A stretch of 58,443 nt of DNA, counting the filler, from Sluysia triapertura (Eukaryota): the NCBI GenBank assembly GCA_046118255.1. It is 5 parts of 5 records of this genome, joined end to end, with 100 filler letters (N's around TTAATTAATTAA, not from the genome) between each part and the next. Parts side by side here need not be neighbours in the genome. Positions count along the whole stretch, not along the records: positions 12,832 to 24,420 come from JBJNIA010183091.1; 4 more parts are not named here. One strand, written 5' to 3'. Below are positions 12,832-24,420 of the stretch, one piece after another; within the stretch, counting starts at the first letter, position 1; every line of letters starts with the position of its first letter. The notes under the pieces were generated by a model. It saw only the letters and a program-made list of their open reading frames with translations. It had not been told where the DNA came from and did no database searches. The position numbers and the translations under genes are program-made.

Positions 12832-15120
12832 ATCGGCATTATTGCGCAATTATGATTTTATATTTCACACGTATTCCTTATTTCACTGCCATTTGCGCCA
12901 TTACCATTTGCTTTATCTCTCATTCACTCCACTGCTTGATATGTAAACTACTGCGAAATTTCTACATCTTTAAGAGTACAACCTTCAAGCCTCACGTTTG
13001 CTGCTCTTATTTAGCCCACTATATCAATCTTTAGTTACATAATGCAACAAGATCCTCTTGTAAGCTCTCAACATGATGAAGTGTAAGAACTGGTCTTCGT
13101 TGGGTAATTTTTATTACTCAACCTACCGTTCCTTACAAACAGTTGGCTCTTTACTCAACTTGGTCACTGCCTCGGCTGCTCATGGAACAATTGCTGATTT
13201 TTTAAAGAATACTCCGCGTGAGAATGTTCGGCCCAGTGGCGGGGGGGCCAGAAGATCATATTATTCGACTCGTCTCGAGCAATCCCTTGAGGAACTACTT
13301 GGGGCCCTACACCACACCACCCCCAAAAGGCAGCATGGTCAGCGCTCCTCTGCCAGAGAAGTTAAGAGAGTGAGTGAGTGTAGGAACTCCTCTTTGTTTC
13401 CAGTCAGCAGGTGAACCCGCTTCACAGAAGTCTATGAAATCAGCAGTTCCCAAACGATCACAATGGAACCTTTACTCCGCGTGTTCACGCTGGATCCAGT
13501 AGCGGAGGGATCCGAAGATCTCGTTCAATGAACGATTCAATCCAAACTAGGCAGGTGGACCTGCCAATCTACAGATGGTCAAGTGTACCACCTACGCGAA
13601 ACTGAAACTCCACGCGTACATGTTGAACCTAGTCGCGGAGGGGTTCGAAAATGGTCACCAACTATCGAAAACCGGACAGTTGAAAATGACAATGCTGGAA
13701 ATCAGAAACTTGGTAACCACAAAGTCAAAACTCCGCTGGTACACGCTAAACCTAGTCGCGGAGGGGTTCGAAGCATAAACAAAAACCCACAATCATTGGC
13801 CAATGAGAAAAATGGAGAACAAAGCATCAAGAAAAGGAAAGTGAGATGCCCAGTAGCGCAGGGGCTCGAAGATCGCAGCAGCACGCAGCACGGAAATCTC
13901 AAAATGAAAATCTAAAGGATAGTATTTGTTCTCTATGCCAAAAATATTTAAAATCACCTTTTTTAAACTTTCTAAATATCTCAATCCAAGTTAGGGGTTA
14001 TTGTTGCAACTTTTTTCACTTTAACACTTTCTTTCAATACTTACTACGGACCGAAATGTTATTGACTTGCGAAACTTTCTGCATTATAATACTTTTCTTT
14101 CCTCTTCTCATAATTTCCGAACCCCATTCCCTCCTTTTTGTAAGCATGTACTTAAGCCGCATCAATAACGAATTTAAAATTCTCTATGGTCATTCTGACT
14201 TTTCACATCTTCATCTCAAAGCTCCTCCTATTTCGAAACGACCTGTAAAGGCTACTACAGATATCATCTTGGAGACTCAAAAACCAATCAATGACTTTCT
14301 GGAAGGACTTCAGTTACTTTTCGATGAGAACTCCCTCTTGCCTCTACAGACTCCAAACTTCTTAAGTTTAAGTTTAATACTACTAATTATAATGCTACTA
14401 CCGTCACCGCTACTGCCACTAGTACTGCCATACCTGATGTCTGTCATCCGAAGTACCTGATGACATTGACCGGTTCGTTAAGTCTCAATAATTAACTTCT
14501 GACTTTTACTTCATTTCTGACTTCGCCAATGAGCCCTTGTATTTTGGTTCGGTCCGGTAGCGGAGGAACTAGAAGATATCCTGTAAATAATACTCAGCAT
14601 GCCAGGCCCAGTTGCAGAAGATCTGTTTATCCAATAGTGCAGAAACTCCGTGGGTACACGTTGTACCCAGTCTCGGAGGGGTCCGACGATCTCATGGTTT
14701 CTACAACCCAAACCAACTCCTACGACTGCGGTCCTCTTCTTTACGGATATATCAGACGCATCTCCTCTCAGAGGTCTTGCACTCGACTAACTGCTGCCAA
14801 CATTCGCTCTTACATCAAATCTCTTCGTCCTGAAAAACGCCTGATCGGGGCAGGTAAAATCTCTTCTACTCTTTTCTACCATTTCTACTTCTGTCACTAT
14901 GATGACAAGTATTCAGAATGACTATCATAATATGCAGTTGAAGCCTTCCTTCGAGACCAAGTCTGTCTTGACTCTTCCATGAGAATTATAAAACCTATCT
15001 GTTCCATTTCTCTTCTTGCTGGCGATTTATACGGGTTCTATAAATACTTTCCCTTGTCTCACTTCGCGAAGACCCAAAGAGATTTTAAATATACTCCGCG
15101 TGTTTATGATGGACCCAGTT
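12832..15120 (+). mobile_element. Copy A of the Ulp1-protease / pseudoknot-repeat element (rearranged, internally deleted)
   Basis: Repeat units at ~13211, 13474, 13607, 13730, 13846 (partial), 14530-14690 and 15093 (partial). The protease C-terminal part QTNSYDCGPLLYGYIRRISS...EKRLIGAGK aligns with 17836-18954. 12832-12917 matches 17508-17590 in inverted orientation. Confidence 0.7.
14695..15060 (+). pseudogene. Ulp1/C48 protease C-terminal fragment (catalytic Cys motif), zinc fingers deleted
   Basis: QTNSYDCG motif. FYFCHYD is joined directly to DKYSE*, whereas copy B has the zinc-finger segment between them. Confidence 0.75.
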
Positions 15121-17835
15121 AGAAAATTTAAAGATTTAAATTTTCTTCTTCATTATTCTTCTTACTTCTCTTTTGAATCTTTTTCTGATTCTAAAATACT
15201 CTCTAAAATACCTTCCTTTCTCTCAACATCTGTCTAGAATCTCTCGTTCTAAAGTTACTACCTACACCTTAATCTTTCCTTTTCTTGGCACTACTTATTC
15301 TGAAAAATTTACTATCCTTAAATCTGTCAAATTCCCGTCCTCACAAGTCAACAAAAAATAATCGACATCGCTTAAATAAAGATGGAAAAACAAGTAAATA
15401 ATTTTTGTTCCGCCCCACCATCTCAGTCAGCAGTGTCGATGGATTCTCAGAAGAGAAAATATTTTACATGTTGATGAACATTATATGTTCAATATCCAAT
15501 CAATACAAATTAGTTAATTATTTAGAATTATTAAGTATGGGTTATCTGATATCGACCAATATCATGGTAATGTTAAATTATTATAAAATTTATAATTTTA
15601 TATTTAAAATATTGAATATATATTCAATATTCATTTATTTAGATAAATGTTATGAAATATTAAACATTATTTAATATTCAAAAAGATAATGATGAATAAG
15701 AATAAATATAAAATTTATAATTTTATATTTAAAATATAAGTACAAGTTAGATAATGTAATCACGTTGAATTTTAAATTTTATAAAATTGGTAGTGTTGTC
15801 CTGAAATAAGTATTAAAGACGTTAGAATGGCACGTAATTTGCATCCAGATGACCAGCATGCGGTTATATATATTACTCAAGAAGCTGCAATAACAATTTA
15901 AATATCGGTCAGTGGCAAAACCATCACGTGTCGGCAAGGTCTACAAATAACCTAAGATGTAATAATTCTATGTTTTATATGATTAACAATTTTGTCAATA
16001 AATAGAATAACTTTGTATTTTTATATTGTAATTATACTTAATTGATACGTGCCTTAAGCACCATTTTCGTAATCATTATTGTTTACAGATTTATATGGAT
16101 TCTGATAATAGATCAAATTACAAAGTTGATTGTAAAACAATTAATAATAATTTAGTAAAATGATACTTTTAAAGCTAATAAAAATAATACCACAATACTT
16201 ATCTTTATATAAAGCAATCAAAATTGTTTGCACTTACTAAAACTGCTATAGAAAACCTTTCGAAACCTTACTACCTTCTAATAAAATATCAACCCTGCTA
16301 GAAAGCTTAATCGTTCGCTCAGAGATAAATTATTATTGCTTAAAGATAAGGCTTCATTTCATAAAGATTCAATCAATAAAAAACTTCTGCTGGCATACCT
16401 GATCAAATACGCAATGATGTAATAAAAATTACTGATAATTTTAATCAACTTAATAAATTAAATAATGAACTAGTGTGTCATGAATAATTATCGAAAATAA
16501 GTTCAAGCTTTTTTGAATATACAAATGCACAACTAACCAAAATGCAATATATTACATAACATAGAGACTATTATTAAACGTAGGAAAATGTTACTTAATG
16601 TTATACAAAACCCACATTTAACTTTACATACCCTCATATCTTCAATCACATTAAAATATTTGCGATATTTCACAATGCAGCCTTACTACCCAATTTCGAC
16701 ATATTTTATACTTACTGATAGGATAAATCATTAAAAATCATTAAAACCATCACATTTAAAATACATTAAATAATTTATAAAACATTATAAACTTCTTACC
16801 AAAATCTAAGTCTGATATGCTTCCAGAATTCAGTCAACTGAACCATTTTCAATCTTCCATATAAATGACTAAAATCCACTAATTCAGCTCTTAATTTTCT
16901 AAGTCATGTTTATTAATTTATTAGTAATTACTTATAAATTGCAACAATTATTTCGCAATTAACGATAAAAATAATTCAAAATCATATAGAAAAGTAATAC
17001 TTAAAATTCATACATTTAAACAAACGTTATAAAAGTAAATTATACAATTAATTTTTTTAAATAAATTAATTTAGTATCTCTAGTTTATTTATTTTATATT
17101 CAAAATATAATTTTAGAATGACTTAAAAGTGCAGTGAGTTTGCAATGTTTATCAAATAACTGCAAAAAAAATTTTTAAAACAAAATAAATTAATGTTCTA
17201 TCTCTTAATTCTTTAAAATTTTTCTTGTATTTTTAAACTATAACTATTTTCTATTTCGTTGGAAAATAAAGAATAACGAAATAAATTAACAATTTTGTTA
17301 TTGACAAAATTTTACTCGATGTTGTAGTATTATGCACTTAAAAATCTGCGTCGATCATGAAATTTATAAATATTAGCAATTTAATAATTGAAAATTATAT
17401 AAATTATTCACATTATATATAGAATAAAAATTATACAAATGTTGGATTTAGTGAAAGGTGGAGTAGATATGAGTGTTGTAACTTGTATAAAAATAAAAGA
17501 ATATTTATAAAGCAAATGATAATGGCGCAAATGGCACTGAAATAAGGAAAACGTGTGAAATATAAAATCTTAATTCGCAATAATGCTGATTGTAATTGAT
17601 TTAAGTAAATTAGCATTTAACACAATATATACTACTGCCAAAATACGCCAAAGTAGTACAATAAACTTTTGAAAAAATATAGCTAAACTTCCTTCGCGAC
17701 TCTTAAAAGTTGCTCATGTTGGCTACTAAAGTGATTAAAAATTAGAATTATCGAATAGGTGGGTTTTATGATTCTAATAGAATTGTCGGAACAGACCTGG
17801 TCACGAAGAAAAGCCTCAACTGCGTTCACAGATAG

Positions 17836-18954
17836 TCAATCTGATGACTTATCTTGAGTGTTTACTGGAAGATCAACGAGAGAGTCAATTTCAATAGAAA
17901 AGTTGGAGACGGATTGAAAGTGATGGAACAGAGAGCCGATGGAAAGAACTCGGAGACAATGGGAACAAAAGAAGGATGTGTCTGAAGGATTGAGGTCATG
18001 CGAAGCAAGATGGCGAGTTACATTGTTGTTGGTATCCGTAGGAGTAAAAGATTGGCCACAACGGTTAACGTGACAGTACAAAAGACAGTCAGAGTGGCAG
18101 AAATAGAATTGATAAGAAGAGAAGGAAGAAGAAGAAGGTTTGCCAGCTCCGACCAAGCGTTTTTCGGAATAAAGGGCCTTAACAATGAAAAGGATAGAAG
18201 TCGCATTAAAACGAGTGCAATGCCTGTTGGAAGAAAGGCGTTGGATGAATCCACAGAGAAGAGGACCGCAGTCAAAGGAGTTGGTTTGAAGAGAGTGAGT
18301 GCGACCGGCGACGATAGAGTAGGAAGGATGATTGTAAAGTAAGGAGAATTGAGAAAGGATAATGCGGGCCTTATCGGTTCGATAGGGATGAAGATTAGCA
18401 GAAAGAGGATCCATAAGTTCGGCTTTTCCAGTGCATTTGTCAGCAAAGATAAGGTACCAGTGTTTGTTAAGGTTAAGAACAAAGAATATTTTAGTAGCGG
18501 AAAGAACTTTGTAAAGGTCAATAAAGGTATGATAGGTTGGGGATTTGTGAAAAAGAGACTCGGTCGCGAAATCAGGTACAAAGAGAAAGTCTGGAGATAG
18601 ACTGAGACTGTCAACAAAAGTTATGATGTCATCAGACGAGAAAAGATATTGTAGATGGCGAATGTCAGAAGGTTTAGCATTCCTAGAAAGATGAATTTGT
18701 TTAAGTTTCGAAATCTTTGCGTCAATAGTAACAGGGGAATCAAAAAGGTTCAGTGAGGCATAAAAGTCATCGAAAGAAGTTTTAGATGCTGCAGAATCCT
18801 GTTCATCGTTATCAGAATGAGTAGATGACGCAATATAAGTGGAAGGAGGAACAACATCAAGAGGAGGAAGAGCAATGGACTGGATTGATTCAGAAGAAGA
18901 AGGAACATCAGCAATAGTAGGAGTAACTTGATTATTAGAGCCGACGTTTTTCAA
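17836..18954 (-). CDS. Ulp1/SENP-like (C48, clan CE) cysteine protease followed by C2H2-type zinc fingers; part of a longer decayed polyprotein
   Basis: Catalytic motifs in order: IFFVLNLNKHWYL (His), ELMDPL (Asp), QTNSFDCG (Gln/Cys). Then CHVNRCGQSF..VTRHLASH and FFCSHC..LFHH. No introns. A Ser/Pro-rich linker continues upstream to the repeat array. Confidence 0.85.
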   Translation of the reverse strand: MKNVGSNNQVTPTIADVPSSSESIQSIALPPLDVVPPSTYIASSTHSDNDEQDSAASKTSFDDFYASLNLFDSPVTIDAKISKLKQIHLSRNAKPSDIRHLQYLFSSDDIITFVDSLSLSPDFLFVPDFATESLFHKSPTYHTFIDLYKVLSATKIFFVLNLNKHWYLIFADKCTGKAELMDPLSANLHPYRTDKARIILSQFSLLYNHPSYSIVAGRTHSLQTNSFDCGPLLCGFIQRLSSNRHCTRFNATSILFIVKALYSEKRLVGAGKPSSSSFSSYQFYFCHSDCLLYCHVNRCGQSFTPTDTNNNVTRHLASHDLNPSDTSFFCSHCLRVLSIGSLFHHFQSVSNFSIEIDSLVDLPVNTQDKSSD

Positions 18955-19276
18955 GAGTTTTTCCCGAAGTGCAGGGCAGAGTTTCCGAACCGGTGGGAGG
19001 TTTGAAGGAGGAGGTTAGAGTGTAATTTTTGAAGACTTAGGAGCAGAGGATGGAAAAGCAGAAGAAGAACGCCTAAGAAGAGAAGAATGAGATTGACAGA
19101 ATCGAGCAGGGGCATTTTTAGGAATTAAGTAAAAAGAAGAAGTAGCAGAAGTAGAAGCAGGTTTAGGAAGATCATAAGAAATAGTCCTACAAGGAGCAAG
19201 GCTTGGTAGAAGATAGAAGTAAGGTGCAGAAAGAAGCAGAGGAAAGTCAGATTTTGGAAAAATATCTGCAGCGGAT

Positions 19277-19853
19277 CTTCGGGCTCCCCGCTACTGGGCC
19301 CACTAAGCGGAGTATTATTTTTAATAATTGGTTGTTTGGACTTTTTGGATTTTCTAGCCCCTCCGCTACTGGGCCGGACATGCGGAGTATTCTTTAAATC
19401 TGTTTCTGGTTTTCGGTCCCCTCCGCACTGGGACCAGCATTTACCAGCGGAGTATATTTATTTCTAAATTTTCGGGCCCCTCCGCTACCGGGCCGGACAT
19501 GCGGAGTATTCTTTAAAATATCATGCTGCCGGAATCTTCGGTCCTCCCCGCTACTGGGACCAAAATGTACAAGCGGAGTATATTTTTCGAAGCCATAGAG
19601 TTTTCGGACCCCCCGCGAATTGGTCCACTATTTACACGCGGAGTATCTTTATCATGTTGGAATAATCTTCGGGCCCCTCCGCGACTGGGCCGGACATGCG
19701 GAGTATTATTTGACATTAACATGGATCTTCGGACCCCCTCCCGCGAATGGATCCATTATGTACACGCGGAGTATTTTTAACATTTTTAAAATTCTGGAAA
19801 ACTCGAAAATCTCTTCGGGCCCCTCCGCGACTGGGCCGGACATGCGGAGTATT
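19277..19853 (-). repeat. Tandem array of nine GC-rich units, consensus ATACTCCGC-N6/12-GGNCCC-AGTA-GCGGAG-GGGNCC-GAA, with unique AT-rich spacers
   Basis: Unit starts (A of ACT) at 19850, 19772, 19704, 19644, 19579, 19507, 19453, 19388 and 19313. Confidence 0.95.
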
Positions 19854-20749
19854 TTTTGTCACAGGAGCCGAATAAGGTGATCTTCATTTTGCGGGAACGA
19901 ACAAAAGTTTTTACACAATATTAGACCATGCAGTGAGAAAAATAAGAGTTTTCTTACATTTTCAATAAAATATACATACCATCTCGGTTTTACTAATCGT
20001 TTCATCACCGTATCTGGCTCTTAAGGATTAGACCATACAGTGACAAAATAAGAAATATGCAATTAAATACATCATTCTCGTAAGTTATCAGACAACTTTA
20101 AATTTACCTTTATAAGTATTATTTGTGGGCGTTTAAACTGAGTGTTACGACTTCTAATTATGTCAATGGAATAATTACTAATTAGATCTTAATGATATTT
20201 CTTTTTGCAACACTTACTATTCATTTTATTTTTCGAATTCATAGACTTTACTTATTTATAAACGAACTTATTACCATTTTATAAGAACTTAAAGTCGGGT
20301 TGAGAAATTAGGAACACAAATTATTTACATACCTCACCATTTGTGATGGTTTTCCATCCATTTTTAGTCATATGTGATGGTATTAATTTTCACACTAAAA
20401 TAAGCAGTTATATTATAAAAATATTTATTTTAATAGTGTTACTTAATTTACGTAATTATTCTTTATTTACTTATTATATTTTTATTTTTAGCTAGTTAAT
20501 ATTTAGTGATCATGATTTACACAACCTGTTTAATTTGTCTGCGGTCCATACGAAAATTTACAGATTTCGTTTCTTCTGTCTCTATCTTTTGTTTAATACG
20601 TCTCTTTCTCCTTTACCATCATGTCCCCTATGTCTTCACTGTCGAATTCATTTCTGACTCGGAACAGCCAGGGATTGATATTATTCAATCAGTAGGAGGA
20701 GGAAAAATCTTGGTAAGCATGGGTTGGTGAGACCAACCGTTGAGTTTAT

Positions 20750-22053
20750 TGCAGGTCTTACCAAGTCAAAGAAACGTAACAGTCGTAGACGGTACCTCAA
20801 ACACCTTTATAAGACTAATAATTCTAATAATAAGAAACCAATTAACCACTTTTCGAAAAGGAAATAGGACTTTCATAACCTATTACATTTACTTTTAGTA
20901 TATATATATATATATATAATTTTAAAAACTTACGATTTTTATTATTGTTCATAATTTTAGCTCCATTCAAGCTCGTATTTTACAGCAACAGAAAAACTTT
21001 TATATCCATGATGACATGTTCTGTCATAAAGCATTATCCCTGCTTTCTTTTCTAATTCTGTAGAAACTCCCAACAACCTTAAGAGTGAGCTAAATCTTAA
21101 CATGGCTACGCACATTTTTTCAATGAACCCTGATCTACCCCGTATTTCTTTGAATGGTCTTTCGCAAATACCAGACGACATTAACTCTATCTATATAGTT
21201 GTGGCTGGAGGAATTACTAAGGTCTCACTTTTGGAAAAAGGTTTACCCTTCATTACCAGAGTTCACGGGTTTTCCACACTGCACGTTACAAATATTCATA
21301 AATGGTGCAGGATTATAGTTGAAGCTGGTGAGTTCCCTACATCTCTTTACCCTCTTCTTGTTGGAGAACAGTCGTTTTTGCCCAACTTGTATGCCAAAAA
21401 TATTGTTAATCAAGACCAATGGAACAAATGTTCCCTTTTTATCAACCTATGATGAATACCGTTTAACTTTTGTAGCTTTTTCTTACGCCTTCGATTTTCT
21501 TCATAAACCTTATGTCCCCTAATCAAAACAGTTTCATTCAGAAGCTAACATTAAACCTCGCCTCCGAATAAAGAATTTCGTATGGGATAGAAAGGATATA
21601 AAAGATGAAGATATCGCGAAGGCTAAGGATGTAGATGACGTCCGACTTTACTACATTATAAGATATTAGTTTCCTTACATTCTCGTATTATAATTGAAAG
21701 TGCGTTTGCTATTCGGATGGCTTAAAGAGGTCAAAAATATGTCGAACCACTATCTGTTATCTTATGACACAGCTGATCACATTTCGCGTGCTCGACGAAC
21801 TTTTCGTTTACTTTATCCCGTTCCGATACGTATGACATGCACACGTATGACGTTTGAGTTAATATCGCTTTTTGATTACATCAGAAAGACATTGTTTTTA
21901 CCTAGTTGTAATTTATCACCTCCCTCTTTTTTTCCTTTTGTTTCTTCTTCATCTGCTAATTCTACTACTTTGACTACTACAACTTCTCTTTCAGCACCGT
22001 CATCATCATCGACATCAACTAAATTATTACTCACGGGAGACTTTAGTGTGTGA
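20750..22053 (+). pseudogene. Unknown gene family copy 2 (paralog of 299-1858)
   Basis: Exon GLTKSKKRNSRRRYLKHLYK..KPI, an intron ending TTTTAG at 20960, then IQARILQQQKNFY..LKSELNLNMATHIFS... Roughly half of residues are identical to copy 1 by eye. Frameshifts and deletions are present. Confidence 0.75.
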
Positions 22054-23783
22054 TGTACCCTAAGCCAATTTAGTTGTTTAAAGATTTTTTGATGATTGAA
22101 TGTGTTTATAAATTCATGAATTAGAGACGTTATTATAATTTTGGGTTTTGTAATGAATTTAATATTCTTTCTGTAACATTCGTGTTGACGATGTTTTAGA
22201 AGTAAATTTAGTACGCTGTAAGTAATTTTGACGCTGAAAGTAACATGCGGATCACTTAAATCTTTACTAAGGTCCATGAACATATTTTTTGCGTTAGTTG
22301 AGAATTGCCTAAGCCTAATTTTAATTTCTTTTACTAAATTATAGATTTCAAAATTTTTGACAAATTGAAGAGGTTTAGCTTCATAGTAAACAAAAATTTC
22401 AACAAAATTAATTTCTATTAATCTTAATATACATTTAATCATTAATAAATTAAGAGATAAATCTAAAGTTCCTTTTAGATCGTGAATGTCAAAATTAAAC
22501 ATAAATAGATAAATTGATATATATTTGGTTATTAAAAATGTCCTAATCAATTTTAAAATTTCGTTTTCACCTAATTCTTCTTCCTCTGAACTTTCAAGAT
22601 ACGTCACATTTTGTTGTTCTTCACGAATCCATTTAATGGTTCTGTAAACTAAATTAAAACTAAATGAACATGAATTATTTTAGTATAGTACAAATAATTA
22701 AGAAAGAAAACAGCGTTTCCTTGATACATCGATTCACAAATCAATAATGTGCATCTAGATAATCTGCCGGTGTAGAGATAATGCATCGCTGACTTCAGAA
22801 CCTCAGAATTATCGGAATAAATAGAGTTTAACTCTTTTTCGAATGTTCGCATAACAATGTCTGAACGTAGATCGGTTACGTCGTGCAAAATACTAATATC
22901 AACTTGTGGCGGTACTAGAATTATAGTGCAATACTGTGACTTAGTAATAATTCGTAGGATTTGATCATGACTTTCCTTTTTTGATTTGTTTGGAATGGTA
23001 AGTGTATTAATTTCAATTAGAAAATTCCTGTAATACTTCTGAGAAAATTTCATCATATTAAATACTTTATACACATAATTGTTTATCATGGTAAATTCGT
23101 TTAGATACGATATCGTATAGACGTAATATTGACGTAATGATTAAGTAATACCATAATTACTAATGGTTGAACAGAGTAGATTTGGTAAAGAATTAGAGTG
23201 TTTTTGACAATAGTTTGCTGAATCATAGTGACTCCTTTTTTTAGATTGTCATCATTGTGTATATCTGCAGATCCATTTCGAGTAGAATCATTGTCTGGAC
23301 ATCTCAGAAAAGCTAATATTTCGTTGGAGAATATTAGTTCGTTTGAAAACTTTATGTCTACAAAATTGAGGTACCTCATCATTAGCTGCATATGATCCTA
23401 AATAATTATCTTCAAAAAGTGTGCTTGCTAATTTTATCATCATTTCTTGTAATCCTGATCTGCAAATACGATTTATAACATTTATCTTTATAGTTGGATT
23501 TTCGCAAAATATACTTGTATCTTCAAAATAACTAAATCGTAATTTAAAATGTGACTCAGATCGATTCAAACGTTGTACACAATTAAAATACGAAGTCGTT
23601 CAATTTTTTTTGTTTAACTTTACATTTGTCCCGCGATTCGTGAAATCTTTTAAACTCCACAGTATCTAAATTAATTTGAAAAGTACTGCTTTTTAAACTC
23701 TTTACTATGTTTTTTAGATAGCTCAGACAGCGGATATATACGATTACAAAATTGTGATAATTTTTTACTTTGATATATTTCAC
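22050..23783 (-). pseudogene. Long intronless frameshifted coding relic including a divergent BTB/POZ-like segment
   Basis: Five abutting ORFs. YCTIILV...DLRSDIVMRTF...NSEVLKSAMHYLYTGRL resembles the BTB pattern (DV.L.V...LAARS..F..MF...E.F..LL.YLYTG.L). Confidence 0.45.
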
Positions 23784-24420
23784 TGCACTTTTGAATTTTG
23801 TCTAGTCTGGAATTTTAATTGTGTTGCTTTTTTTGTTTTCTGCCCAATTAATAAAATTTTTATTTTATTTTCAATTCTATTATTAGTATACCCAATCAGA
23901 GTATTTTAGAGTATGGTAAGAAATATGCACTCTGATTGGGTTGTAAATAATTTTCATTTGTAAATGTTAGACTAATAACCGTCATCAGTACTGACATTCC
24001 AAAGACGTTTTTAAATTGTAGTATCAGTACTGATGGCGGCAGCAACTAATTTAATGGCTTTAATCAAAATTATTAAAATTATGTTATGTAAACAAGAGCA
24101 ATAATAATAATAACAACAATAATATTACTGTTATTATTATTATCAAGAAATAAAAATAAAGTACATAAATATTTCTTTTATTGAAAACCACAAGATCTTT
24201 TCTATTCTACATTCTTTCATTCTACATATATAAAATTAAGAGACATAAAACTGATGAAATACTGTGAAGGAGCAACGATAACAAGGTATACTCGTCTCGG
24301 TTATCGCTGTTGCTTCATATTTAAAATAATGAACTCTTTAAGACTTTATTAAGTTTATTTATAAAGGTAAAAGAAATGACTTGAGTTATACTTAAGACGA
24401 AGAGTGTTAGAATAAATTAC

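What the first reader, a model, noticed from the sequence alone, without database searches (positions are those of the whole stretch)
19277..19853. Tandem array of covarying RNA pseudoknots at the 5' end of a Ulp1-protease element
Seen in sequence: every unit on the protease-sense strand has two interleaved stems. S1 is CUCCGC/GCGGAG and S2 is NNNNCC/GGNNNN, ordered S1a-loop-S2a-AGUA-S1b-S2b-GAA. Across both copies S2 covaries at three positions: GGCCC/GGGCC, GGUCCC/GGGACC, GGACC/GGUCC, GGAUCC/GGAUCC (13492) and GAACCU/GGGUUC (13624). A synonymous GGA/GGU change tracks a non-synonymous GUC/GAC change, which protein-level selection would not produce. Several other variants are G.U wobbles only on this strand, which points to RNA and gives its polarity. 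I do not recognise the motif. Inference: an undescribed structured RNA (ribozyme, nuclease roadblock, ribosome-pausing or recoding element, or packaging signal) deployed in series by a mobile element.
Basis: partly seen in the sequence, partly recalled or inferred. Interest (0 to 1): 0.9.

Follow-up and report, generated by a model that had tools for sequence, protein, structure and literature searches.

The report
Arrayed twister-like RNA pseudoknot modules
Upstream of a mobile-element protease gene sit nine copies of a 40-base GC-rich motif whose two interlocked stems are kept complementary by paired mutations, and which looks like a stripped-down relative of the twister self-cleaving ribozyme rather than a wholly unknown RNA.

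Summary
Nine units lie at 19274-19857 on the minus strand, just 5' of a 372-codon Ulp1 (Peptidase_C48) ORF. A second, decayed copy on the plus strand carries five full and four partial units.

Every unit has CUCCGC/GCGGAG (S1) interleaved with GGNCC/GGN'CC (S2). S2 shows real compensatory change at three pairs. Its central pair is G-C, A-U or U-A in 14 of 14 units and is the strongest covarying column pair in the alignment. S1 never covaries. The G.U argument for strand polarity is weak.

Conservation is at nucleotide level, not protein level. No Rfam family matches, and no relatives turned up in the metagenome, viral or protein collections.

The motif is probably not unrelated to known RNAs. 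Its ordered blocks (UA-CUCC-GC ... GGNCCCA..AGC-GGAG-GGG) reproduce the T1-P2-T2 core of twister ribozymes, including the CUCC/GGAG P2 of the Schistosoma twisters found at 5' ends of non-LTR retrotransposons. However, P1, the 3' strand of P4, the UAAA strand and the GA are missing, and the twister models do not score it.

Best reading: a twister-derived compact pseudoknot module, repeated in the transcript leader. Its function is untested.

The parts
19274..19857 (-). Array of 9 units (copy C). Short-loop units of about 39 nt mostly alternate with long-loop units of 44-47 nt, spaced 54-78 nt start to start, with AT-rich spacers of 15-39 nt.
   Evidence: Units at 19810-19853, 19724-19775, 19664-19707, 19599-19647, 19533-19582, 19467-19510, 19408-19456, 19348-19391, 19274-19316. 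Higher-order repeat: 19342-19715 vs 19461-19861, 73% over 417 nt. Units are 78% alike, spacers 53%.
18955..19273 (-). Pyrimidine-rich, G-poor leader between the array and the ORF.
   Evidence: Sense-strand composition C 32%, T 38%, G 10%; sequence.
17836..18954 (-). 372-codon ORF (copy C) with a Ulp1/Peptidase_C48 catalytic domain (about 18220-18501) and a C-terminal Cys/His zinc-finger-like region (about 17905-18087). There is no ATG near its start.
   Evidence: ORF. PF02902, E 7.5e-6, 26.4 bits against a cut-off of 20.7. H, D, Q and C are invariant with relatives; best relatives carry Peptidase_C48 with a reverse transcriptase; only a weak C2H2 match, E 0.87.
17507..17835 (-). 3' region of copy C. 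Its last 84 nt (17507-17590) recur at 12832-12916.
   Evidence: 93% over 85 nt, repeat I1.
12832..12916 (+). 3'-terminal segment of a further copy (copy A), cut off by the edge of the piece.
13195..13880 (+). Copy B, first part of its array: 4 full units and 1 partial unit, spaced 123-263 nt.
   Evidence: Units at 13208-13257, 13471-13520, 13604-13653, 13727-13776; partial at 13846-13874.
14529..14691 (+). Copy B, second part of its array: 2 partial units and 1 full unit. These are positional counterparts of the second to fourth units of copy C.
   Evidence: 14547-14578, 14589-14623, 14642-14691; 14585-14706 vs 19711-19584, 69%.
14703..15085 (+). Copy B, remnant of the protease ORF and its 3' region. 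This is a broken gene. Relative to copy C it has two large internal deletions, removing the N-terminal half with part of the protease and the Cys/His region. The retained coding stretch has no stop or frameshift.
   Evidence: 14709-14902 vs 18288-18089, 69%; local alignment continuing into the ORF end and 3' region; tblastn.
15090..15128 (+). Partial unit (5' half only) lying 3' of the copy B remnant.
   Evidence: 27.9 bits, E 3.9e-6.

Best explanation
Each unit is a cis-acting RNA module on the sense transcript of a repeated Ulp1/zinc-finger gene. That gene resembles ORF1 of a retroelement.

The fold. The contiguous 3' strand GC-GGAG-GGGN'CC pairs with two separate 5' segments: CUCC-GC, and the GGNCC(C) that lies in the loop between them. 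The result would be a compact pseudoknot of about 11-12 stacked base pairs. This is the T2-P2-T1 stack of a twister ribozyme, with T2 joined covalently to P2' and T1 lengthened to 5-6 bp. The twister parts P1, the 3' strand of P4, the UAAA strand of L2 and the GA of L1 are absent.

Origin and role. I take the unit to be a deletion derivative of a eukaryotic, Schistosoma-type twister that was kept for its fold. It was then amplified by tandem duplication in the 5' leader.

Shown: the array, the complementarity, compensatory change in S2/T1, nucleotide-level rather than protein-level conservation, and the block-by-block likeness to twister.

Inferred: that the molecule is RNA, that it descends from twister, and what it does. 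My preferred role is marking or stabilising the transcript's 5' region, or binding the element's own protein. Residual self-cleavage at the conserved U^A is less likely. Repetition would buffer against 5' truncation and unequal crossing-over.
For: Structure and covariation.
- 92.8% of cells are paired, against 35-58% in slid controls, and three S2 pairs carry double changes.
- Pair 24-43 is the top mutual-information pair of all column pairs.

Nucleotide-level conservation.
- Units are conserved islands: 78% identity against 53% for spacers, and G is 34% in units against 10-12% in the spacers, leader and ORF.
- Alignment column 33 is an invariant C, although it is a third codon position whose first two bases vary.
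- Unit cores of 32-41 nt break any reading frame.

Orientation. All 18 units are on the ORF-sense strand.

Likeness to twister.
- The Rfam twister-P1 consensus, obtained from a real phage twister, reads UAA-P2-GC-(P3)-cCG-GUCCCAAGCC-CGg-UAAA-P2'-GAGGG.
- The units read (A/U)A-CUCC-GC-loop-(CC)GGNCCCA(GU)AGC-GGAG-GGG.
- P2 is CUCC/GGAG in 7 of 7 S. mansoni twisters in Table 1 of PMC8501958, and in 0 of 26 phage twisters.
- The twister review PMC5408937 states that T2 stacks coaxially on P2, and T1 on P2's other end. A fused version is therefore sterically credible.
- The A immediately 5' of CUCC, which is the conserved A at twister's cleavage site, is invariant in 14 of 14 units.

Context. Twister variants sit at the 5' ends of Perere-3 non-LTR elements (PMC8501958). 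The window ORF's nearest protein relatives are Ulp1 proteins fused to, or followed by, a reverse transcriptase.
Against: - S1 (P2+T2) never covaries, so it rests on complementarity alone.
- The S2 signal comes from about four events in 14 paralogous units at one locus.
- The G.U against A.C polarity count is weak: 7-9 against 3-6.
- The twister covariance models give no hit even at E<=10 on 611 nt, while a real twister scores 73 bits.
- No P1 pairing: cognate flanks give -2.96 kcal/mol against -2.80 for non-cognate flanks, p=0.34.
- P4 and the UAAA strand, which the review calls key to the active site, are missing.
- I noticed the likeness to twister after the fact, from a published table.
- The two stems sum to -15.4 kcal/mol on average, against -12.4 for the nested optimum. 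Thermodynamics therefore does not settle the fold, and nested folds are no better than shuffles.
- No further copies could be retrieved from any collection.
- There are no expression data.
Confidence: 0.45

Rival explanations
1. DNA-level array. The units are repeated binding sites for a DNA-binding protein, acting as promoter, enhancer or insulator monomers in the element's 5' region. Known parallels are the tandem 5' monomers of mouse LINE-1 and the Su(Hw) site cluster in gypsy. Both parallels are from my own knowledge.
For: - The units are GC-rich islands in AT-rich spacers immediately upstream of the ORF.
- The array evolves by tandem duplication.
- The distant relative L001 also has tandem repeats upstream of its Ulp1 ORF1, with a 134-nt period and unrelated sequence.
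- The ORF itself carries zinc-finger-like Cys/His motifs.
Against: - A duplex binding site gives no reason for base 24 and base 43 to change together into three different Watson-Crick combinations.
- It gives no reason to tolerate G.U.
- It does not explain the ordered likeness to the twister core.
- This reading is not exclusive: a module could serve both as DNA and as RNA.
Confidence: 0.17
2. Decayed protein-coding repeat. The array once encoded a repeated peptide of the type NTPxV..GPSxGGxR at the N-terminus of the protease protein, and the complementarity is a by-product of Pro/Gly/Arg codons.
For: - Two of the three sense frames are open through most units.
- Neighbouring units are in phase in 5 of 8 cases.
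- Runs of 2-3 units can be read in one frame.
- The ORF has no ATG near its start, so it may once have extended upstream.
Against: - Unit cores of 32, 33, 38, 39 and 41 nt shift the frame inside units.
- Third-codon positions are invariant while first and second positions vary, so the residue changes R/S/G/L while the base stays fixed.
- A synonymous change pairs with a non-synonymous one.
- The array reading frame is interrupted several times.
- The array ORF has no protein homologue and no Pfam hit.
- Relatives' ORF1 proteins have no such repeat.
Confidence: 0.07
3. Neutral relic. The units are a satellite-like amplification of a dead twister fragment. The complementarity is inherited, and the few paired changes arose through a mutational mechanism, such as template switching between the arms of a short inverted repeat, without selection for any function.
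For: - Only about four compensatory events can be counted.
- All evidence comes from one locus of duplicated units.
- Copy B is clearly decaying, yet its units still pair.
- S1 is simply invariant.
Against: - Units are much better conserved than spacers.
- Uncompensated changes cluster at the ends of the helices.
- The unpaired positions A4, U30 and GA46-47 are also invariant, which inherited complementarity alone does not explain.
Confidence: 0.15
4. Active self-cleaving ribozymes in series. Each unit cuts at the U^A 5' of CUCC, as twister does, and so trims read-through transcripts to a defined 5' end.
For: - The UA-CUCC-GC context matches the twister cleavage site, and the A is invariant.
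- Ribozymes at the 5' ends of non-LTR elements are established, for example twister variants in Perere-3 (PMC8501958) and HDV-like ribozymes in L1Tc (PMC3185411).
- Variants without P1 exist in S. mansoni.
Against: - P4, the UAAA strand and the sheared A-G spacer, described as key to the active site, are absent.
- No ribozyme model in Rfam matches.
Confidence: 0.12

Closest known systems
[quoted passage not shown] 2021, PMC8501958)
   Same: - The order of blocks is the same: N^A, a 4-bp P2, a GC dinucleotide, an L4-like GGNCCCA..AGC, P2', then GGG.
- The three pairings are the same: P2, T2 (GC with GC) and T1 (CCC with GGG), stacked coaxially.
- The P2 sequence CUCC/GGAG is identical to that of the S. 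mansoni family.
- Both sit at the 5' side of a retroelement-type gene.
   Different: - There is no P1.
- The 3' strand of P4 and the UAAA strand of L2 are missing, about 10 nt in all, so T2 runs straight into P2'.
- The GA between P2' and GGG is missing.
- A GU is inserted in the L4-like block.
- T1 is lengthened to 5-6 bp, with a covarying central pair.
- The unit occurs in tandem arrays.
- The twister covariance models do not score it.
Classical H-type RNA pseudoknots found in series, such as the upstream pseudoknot domain of tobamovirus 3' UTRs (from my own knowledge)
   Same: Two interleaved short helices that can stack, with several copies in a row in an untranslated region.
   Different: - Here the zero-length junction lies between the two 3' strands, not between S2a and S1b. 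This makes the connectivity a permuted form of the classical H-type.
- The unit could equally pair its GCGGAG with the CUCCGC of the next unit. S1 is invariant, so the sequence cannot tell the two apart.
- There is no sequence similarity.
Tandem 5' monomer arrays of LINE elements, as in mouse L1 (from my own knowledge); compare the 134-nt 5' repeats in the related element L001
   Same: Tandem, variable-number units upstream of ORF1 in a retroelement-like gene, evolving by duplication.
   Different: Those monomers are about 200-bp promoter units with no reported base-pair covariation. Here the conserved part is a 40-nt structured core.
NeSL/Utopia-type non-LTR retrotransposons with an N-terminal Ulp1 protease (Kojima & Jurka 2015, PMC4640811)
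   Same: - A Ulp1-like cysteine protease followed by zinc-finger-like motifs.
- The window ORF's best database relatives are Ulp1 proteins fused to, or followed by, an RVT_1 reverse transcriptase.
   Different: - No reverse transcriptase or endonuclease is present anywhere in the 11.6-kb piece.
- Copy B is an internal-deletion derivative rather than a simple 5' truncation.
- No target gene was recognised.

Membership tests
Twister ribozyme | 4-bp P2 preceded by the cleavage dinucleotide N^A, with a conserved A | tested here: met
   CUCC/GGAG pairs in 14 of 14 units. The A 5' of CUCC is invariant, and the base before it is U in 11 of 14.
Twister ribozyme | T2: the conserved GC after P2 pairs with the GC at the 3' end of L4 | tested here: met
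   Columns 9-10 pair with 32-33 in 13 of 14 units each. However, here the GC is covalently continuous with P2'.
Twister ribozyme | T1: the CCC of L4 pairs with the GGG 3' of P2' | tested here: met
   Columns 25-27 with 40-42. The helix is extended by columns 22-24 with 43-45, which covary.
Twister ribozyme | P4 helix closing L4 | tested here: not met
   There is no separate 3' strand. In short-loop units CCG...CGG exists, but it shares its GG with P2' and so competes with it.
Twister ribozyme | UAAA strand of L2 between P4' and P2', and GA between P2' and GGG | tested here: not met
   Both are absent at those positions in all 14 units. Long-loop units carry GUA(A/C)A, but on the 5' side of the L4-like block.
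Twister ribozyme | P1 helix between the 5' and 3' flanks | tested here: not met
   Cognate flank duplexes are no better than non-cognate ones: -2.96 against -2.80 kcal/mol, permutation p=0.34.
Twister ribozyme | Score at or above the Rfam gathering threshold | tested here: not met
   No hit at E<=1 on the piece or at E<=10 on 611 nt. A genuine phage twister scores 73 bits against a threshold of 67.2.
Twister ribozyme | Site-specific self-cleavage | not testable with these tools
   There are no transcript or biochemical data.
H-type RNA pseudoknot | Two interleaved helices, each supported by covariation | tested here: inconclusive
   S2 has three pairs with compensatory change. S1 is complementary but invariant, or shows U.G only.
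HDV-like ribozyme | Nested double pseudoknot with P1, P1.1, P2, P3 and P4 | tested here: not met
   Only 4-5 nt lie between S2a and S1b, and 0 nt between S1b and S2b, which leaves no room for P3 or P4. There is no Rfam hit.
Pseudoknot that stimulates -1 ribosomal frameshifting | Slippery heptamer 5-9 nt upstream, with overlapping ORFs | tested here: not met
   A heptamer at 5-9 nt is present in 1 of 14 units, and 8 of 14 have none within 20 nt. There is no long ORF pair across the array.
Exoribonuclease-resistant RNA (xrRNA) | Match to a described xrRNA family; resistance to 5'-3' decay | tested here: not met
   No Rfam family of any kind matches. Resistance itself cannot be tested here.
Peptidase_C48 (Ulp1) protease | Pfam score above the cut-off and the catalytic His, Asp, Gln and Cys | tested here: met
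   26.4 bits against a cut-off of 20.7. H165, D182, Q223 and C229 are invariant in the alignment with relatives.
NeSL/Utopia-type non-LTR retrotransposon | Reverse transcriptase and restriction-like endonuclease downstream of the protease | tested here: not met
   tblastn with two related reverse-transcriptase proteins finds nothing in the piece. The relatives P0001 and L001 do have RVT_1.

The most novel reading that the evidence does not exclude
The unit is a natural minimal form of the twister fold, about 40 nt long and lacking P1 and P4, with T2 fused to P2. It is still functional, either as the smallest twister-type self-cleaver or as a former ribozyme re-used as a modular structural element. 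A retroelement-like gene deploys it in series of nine or more copies. This would be a kind of rearranged or reduced twister that a dedicated search for missing twister permutations did not find (PMC10085705).
Probability: 0.15. Interest if true: 0.85.

Novelty: new variant of a known kind. Interest (0 to 1): 0.6.

Why it matters
If the fold is real, it shows how a ribozyme scaffold can be pared down to its stacked pseudoknot core and then multiplied as a module by a mobile element. That bears on how small a twister-type fold can be, and on what ribozyme-like structures do at the 5' ends of retroelements: processing, protection, translation or protein recruitment. It also offers a compact, naturally varied pseudoknot with built-in compensatory mutants. 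If it proves to be only a decaying ribozyme fragment, it is an ordinary repeat.

Tried and rejected
**Known RNA families.** Rfam gave nothing on the piece at E<=1 or on the array at E<=10, apart from two meaningless sRNA matches.

**Folding.** Nested MFE folding of each unit is no better than shuffles, as expected for interleaved stems.

**More copies of the unit.**
- A degenerate 24-nt pattern of the 3' half was scanned in viral contigs (1 chance hit).
- The same pattern in metagenome contigs gave 47 single hits, all GC-rich bacterial contexts with no full unit.
- Exact look-up of the ORF found it not on record.
- A word-indexed protein search with the ORF found nothing.
- A full HMMER search of the representatives found only 6 weak Ulp1 relatives.
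- A protein search with an array-encoded ORF found nothing, and one with a neighbouring ORF also found nothing.
- The unit covariance model finds nothing in the relatives' loci L001-L005.

**Element type.**
- No reverse transcriptase is present in the piece.
- Terminal inverted repeats were looked for. Only a 71% AT-rich match (repeat I4) was found, which I judged to be chance.

**Other roles tested.**
- The coding-repeat and frameshift-site readings are rejected.
- A P1 helix is rejected.
- An HDV-like fold is rejected on geometry.

**Literature.** A string search for the unit sequence found nothing, and no supplements are held for the twister paper.

**Organism.** It could not be identified. 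Neighbouring ORFs have no Pfam or protein matches.

I did not make a formal alignment of the units against the seven published S. mansoni twister sequences. They have no reference id, and I did not type them in.

Full report
**What is there**

The piece (12832-24420) is AT-rich and looks eukaryotic. The finding's interval holds nine copies of a 38-47 nt GC-rich unit on the minus strand, separated by AT-rich spacers of 15-39 nt. Read on that strand, a unit is AAUA-CUCCGC-loop-GGNCC(C)-AGUA-GCGGAG-GGGN'CC-GAAGAU. Short-loop units (loop AUGUCC) mostly alternate with long-loop units (11-12 nt loop, mostly containing GUA(A/C)A). Together they give a higher-order repeat of about 120-146 nt.

About 320 nt downstream on the same strand begins a 372-codon ORF (18954-17836). 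It has a Peptidase_C48/Ulp1 domain (Pfam E 7.5e-6, above the cut-off). The catalytic His, Asp, Gln and Cys are invariant against relatives. Two C2H2-like Cys/His motifs follow.

**A second and a third copy**

A second, decayed copy lies on the plus strand at 13195-15130. It has five full and four partial units, and a remnant of the same ORF and 3' region. Relative to the first copy, that remnant has two large internal deletions and no stop or frameshift in what is left. An 85-nt 3'-terminal segment of a third copy sits at the left edge of the piece (12832-12916, 93% identical to 17590-17507). The gene and its array are therefore a repeated, probably mobile, element.

**Checking the observation**

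A covariance model built from the 14 full units recovers all of them at E 4e-16 to 2e-12, and four partial units at E 4e-6 to 0.014. All are on the ORF-sense strand of their copy. The best match anywhere else in the piece is E 0.12, and nothing turns up in the loci of distant relatives.

No shuffle out of 500 reaches the observed covariation score.

- **S2.** It carries three pairs with changes on both sides. Its central pair (columns 24-43) is G-C in six units, A-U in six and U-A in two. It is by far the strongest covarying pair among all column pairs, at 1.45 bits against 0.79 for the next. The partial units that retain both sides also keep this pair.
- **S1.** It is complementary in every unit but invariant apart from U.G, so nothing beyond complementarity supports it.
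- **Number of events.** Units sharing a state are duplicates of each other, so the paired changes amount to about four events, not many.
- **Polarity.** There are 7 G.U cells (9 if two alignment gaps are re-placed). Against them stand 6 A.C cells (3 without the frayed end pair), which would be G.U on the other strand.

**Protein or nucleic acid?**

Two sense frames are open through most units, and 5 of 8 spacings are multiples of three. Four observations argue against a coding constraint:
- Unit cores measure 32, 33, 38, 39 and 41 nt.
- The array is not one open frame.
- A third-codon position (column 33) is an invariant C while the two bases before it vary, so the residue would vary R/S/G/L.
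- Neither Pfam nor the protein collection knows such a repeat, and the ORF1 proteins of relatives lack it.

Conservation is therefore at nucleotide level. Units are 78% alike against 53% for spacers. They hold nearly all the G of an otherwise G-poor sense strand, 34% against 10-12%.

**What the element is**

The ORF has almost no relatives in 1.8 billion representative proteins: six hits, the best at E 1e-7. The informative ones are a Ulp1 domain fused to a reverse transcriptase (P0001) and a 951-aa Ulp1 plus Cys/His protein followed by an RVT_1 ORF (P0005 in L001).

An N-terminal Ulp1 protease is a known feature of NeSL and some Utopia non-LTR retrotransposons (PMC4640811). The window ORF thus resembles ORF1 of such an element. 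However, the piece contains no reverse transcriptase, and copy B is an internal-deletion derivative. The class of the element stays open. L001 also has tandem repeats upstream of its Ulp1 ORF, with a 134-nt period and unrelated sequence.

**Comparison with known RNAs**

Rfam gives no match. The geometry excludes an HDV-like fold, and slippery heptamers at a usable distance occur in 1 of 14 units.

While reading about ribozymes at the 5' ends of non-LTR elements, I found that Table 1 of Liu et al. 2021 (PMC8501958) writes the Schistosoma mansoni twisters as:

I then fetched genuine twisters from phage contigs with a pattern taken from that table. From one of them I obtained the Rfam twister-P1 consensus:

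UAA-P2-GC-(P3)-cCG-GUCCCAAGCC-CGg-UAAA-P2'-GAGGG (73 bits)

The window units have the same blocks in the same order: UA, CUCC, GC, then (CC)GGNCCCA(GU)AGC, then GGAG, then GGG. In these terms:

The twister review (PMC5408937) states that T2 stacks on P2, and T1 on its other end. A version in which GC-GGAG-GGG is one continuous strand is therefore sterically reasonable. This also answers my initial worry that the zero-length junction between S1b and S2b would be impossible in a classical H-type knot.

The P2 sequence CUCC/GGAG is shared with 7 of 7 S. mansoni twisters and with 0 of 26 phage twisters. This hints at descent from that eukaryotic lineage rather than convergence.

**Why it is not a twister**

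- The 3' strand of P4 and the UAAA strand are absent, about 10 nt in all.
- The GA before GGG is absent.
- There is no P1: cognate flanks pair no better than non-cognate ones, p=0.34.
- The models do not score it.

The review calls the L4-P4/L1-T1 architecture key to the active site, so I think catalysis is unlikely but not excluded. The likeness was noticed after the fact and rests on short blocks. I treat it as the closest known relative, not as a classification.

**Most likely mechanism**

I take the unit to be a sense-strand RNA module that folds into a compact stack of about 11-12 bp (T2-P2-T1). It would be derived from a twister by deletion, kept for its fold, and multiplied in the leader by tandem duplication.

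What it does is inference. I favour a role at the 5' region of the transcript, in stability, end definition, or a binding platform for the element's own zinc-finger protein. Serial copies would buffer against 5' truncation and unequal crossing-over. Residual self-cleavage at the invariant A is the most interesting alternative.

S1 is invariant, so the sequence cannot say whether GCGGAG pairs with the CUCCGC of its own unit or with that of the next unit downstream. The latter would give a classical H-type knot and would link the units together.

**Rivals**

- **DNA-level binding-site or promoter monomers.** This fits the position and the L001 parallel, but not the covariation.
- **A decayed coding repeat.** Rejected on the frame evidence.
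- **A neutral relic of a dead ribozyme.** The event count is small, but unpaired invariant bases and the contrast between units and spacers argue for constraint.

**Limits**

All evidence comes from 18 paralogous units at one locus. No further copies could be found in the viral, metagenome or protein collections. The organism could not be identified, and there are no expression data. Thermodynamics does not decide the fold.

- While thinking about possible target genes, I began to write part of a U2 snRNA sequence from memory.
- One search printed three-frame translations of the array regions in which stops are visible. No list of break positions was made, and none is given here.
The consensus lines that the alignment tools printed were not used.

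Noticed in passing
window 15450-15790 and 16735-17280: The very AT-rich stretch (19-28% GC) between the two element copies consists of self-complementary and directly repeated low-complexity sequence. For example, 15490-15756 is its own inverted repeat, and there are 125-nt direct repeats at 15542 and 15667.
   Followed up: no
window 19920-19941 and 20027-20048: A 22-nt direct repeat (91% identical, 107 nt apart) lies just outside the 5' edge of the minus-strand array. It may belong to the element's 5' region, or it may be flank.
   Followed up: no
window 17836-19275 (minus strand): The sense strand of the ORF and leader is strongly G-poor and pyrimidine-rich (G 10-12%, C 28-32%, T 36-38%), which is unusual for a coding strand. 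The units are the only G-rich islands.
   Followed up: partly
L001 1-330 and 6640-6870: The distantly related element with a Ulp1 ORF1 and a reverse-transcriptase ORF2 has 134-nt tandem repeats at its 5' end and 43-nt AT-rich tandem repeats at its 3' end. These are unrelated in sequence to the window units.
   Followed up: partly
window 20500-24420: Several AT-rich ORFs of 74-243 codons lie on both strands, for example 21876-22607 on the minus strand and 21102-21452 on the plus strand. None has a Pfam or protein-collection match, so the neighbourhood gives no clue to the organism.
   Followed up: partly
L054, L064, L068, L069 (phage contigs): These loci carry the twister L4/UAAA/GAGGG pattern. 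Even so, of the five loci scanned only L062 reached the Rfam gathering score for twister-P1. L068 also holds a ROOL RNA and tRNAs. The unscored sites may be other twister permutations.
   Followed up: no
window 13880-14528: About 650 nt with no counterpart in copy C separate the two parts of copy B's array. The stretch contains a 204-codon ORF with no Pfam hit. It may be an insertion or a diverged region.
   Followed up: no
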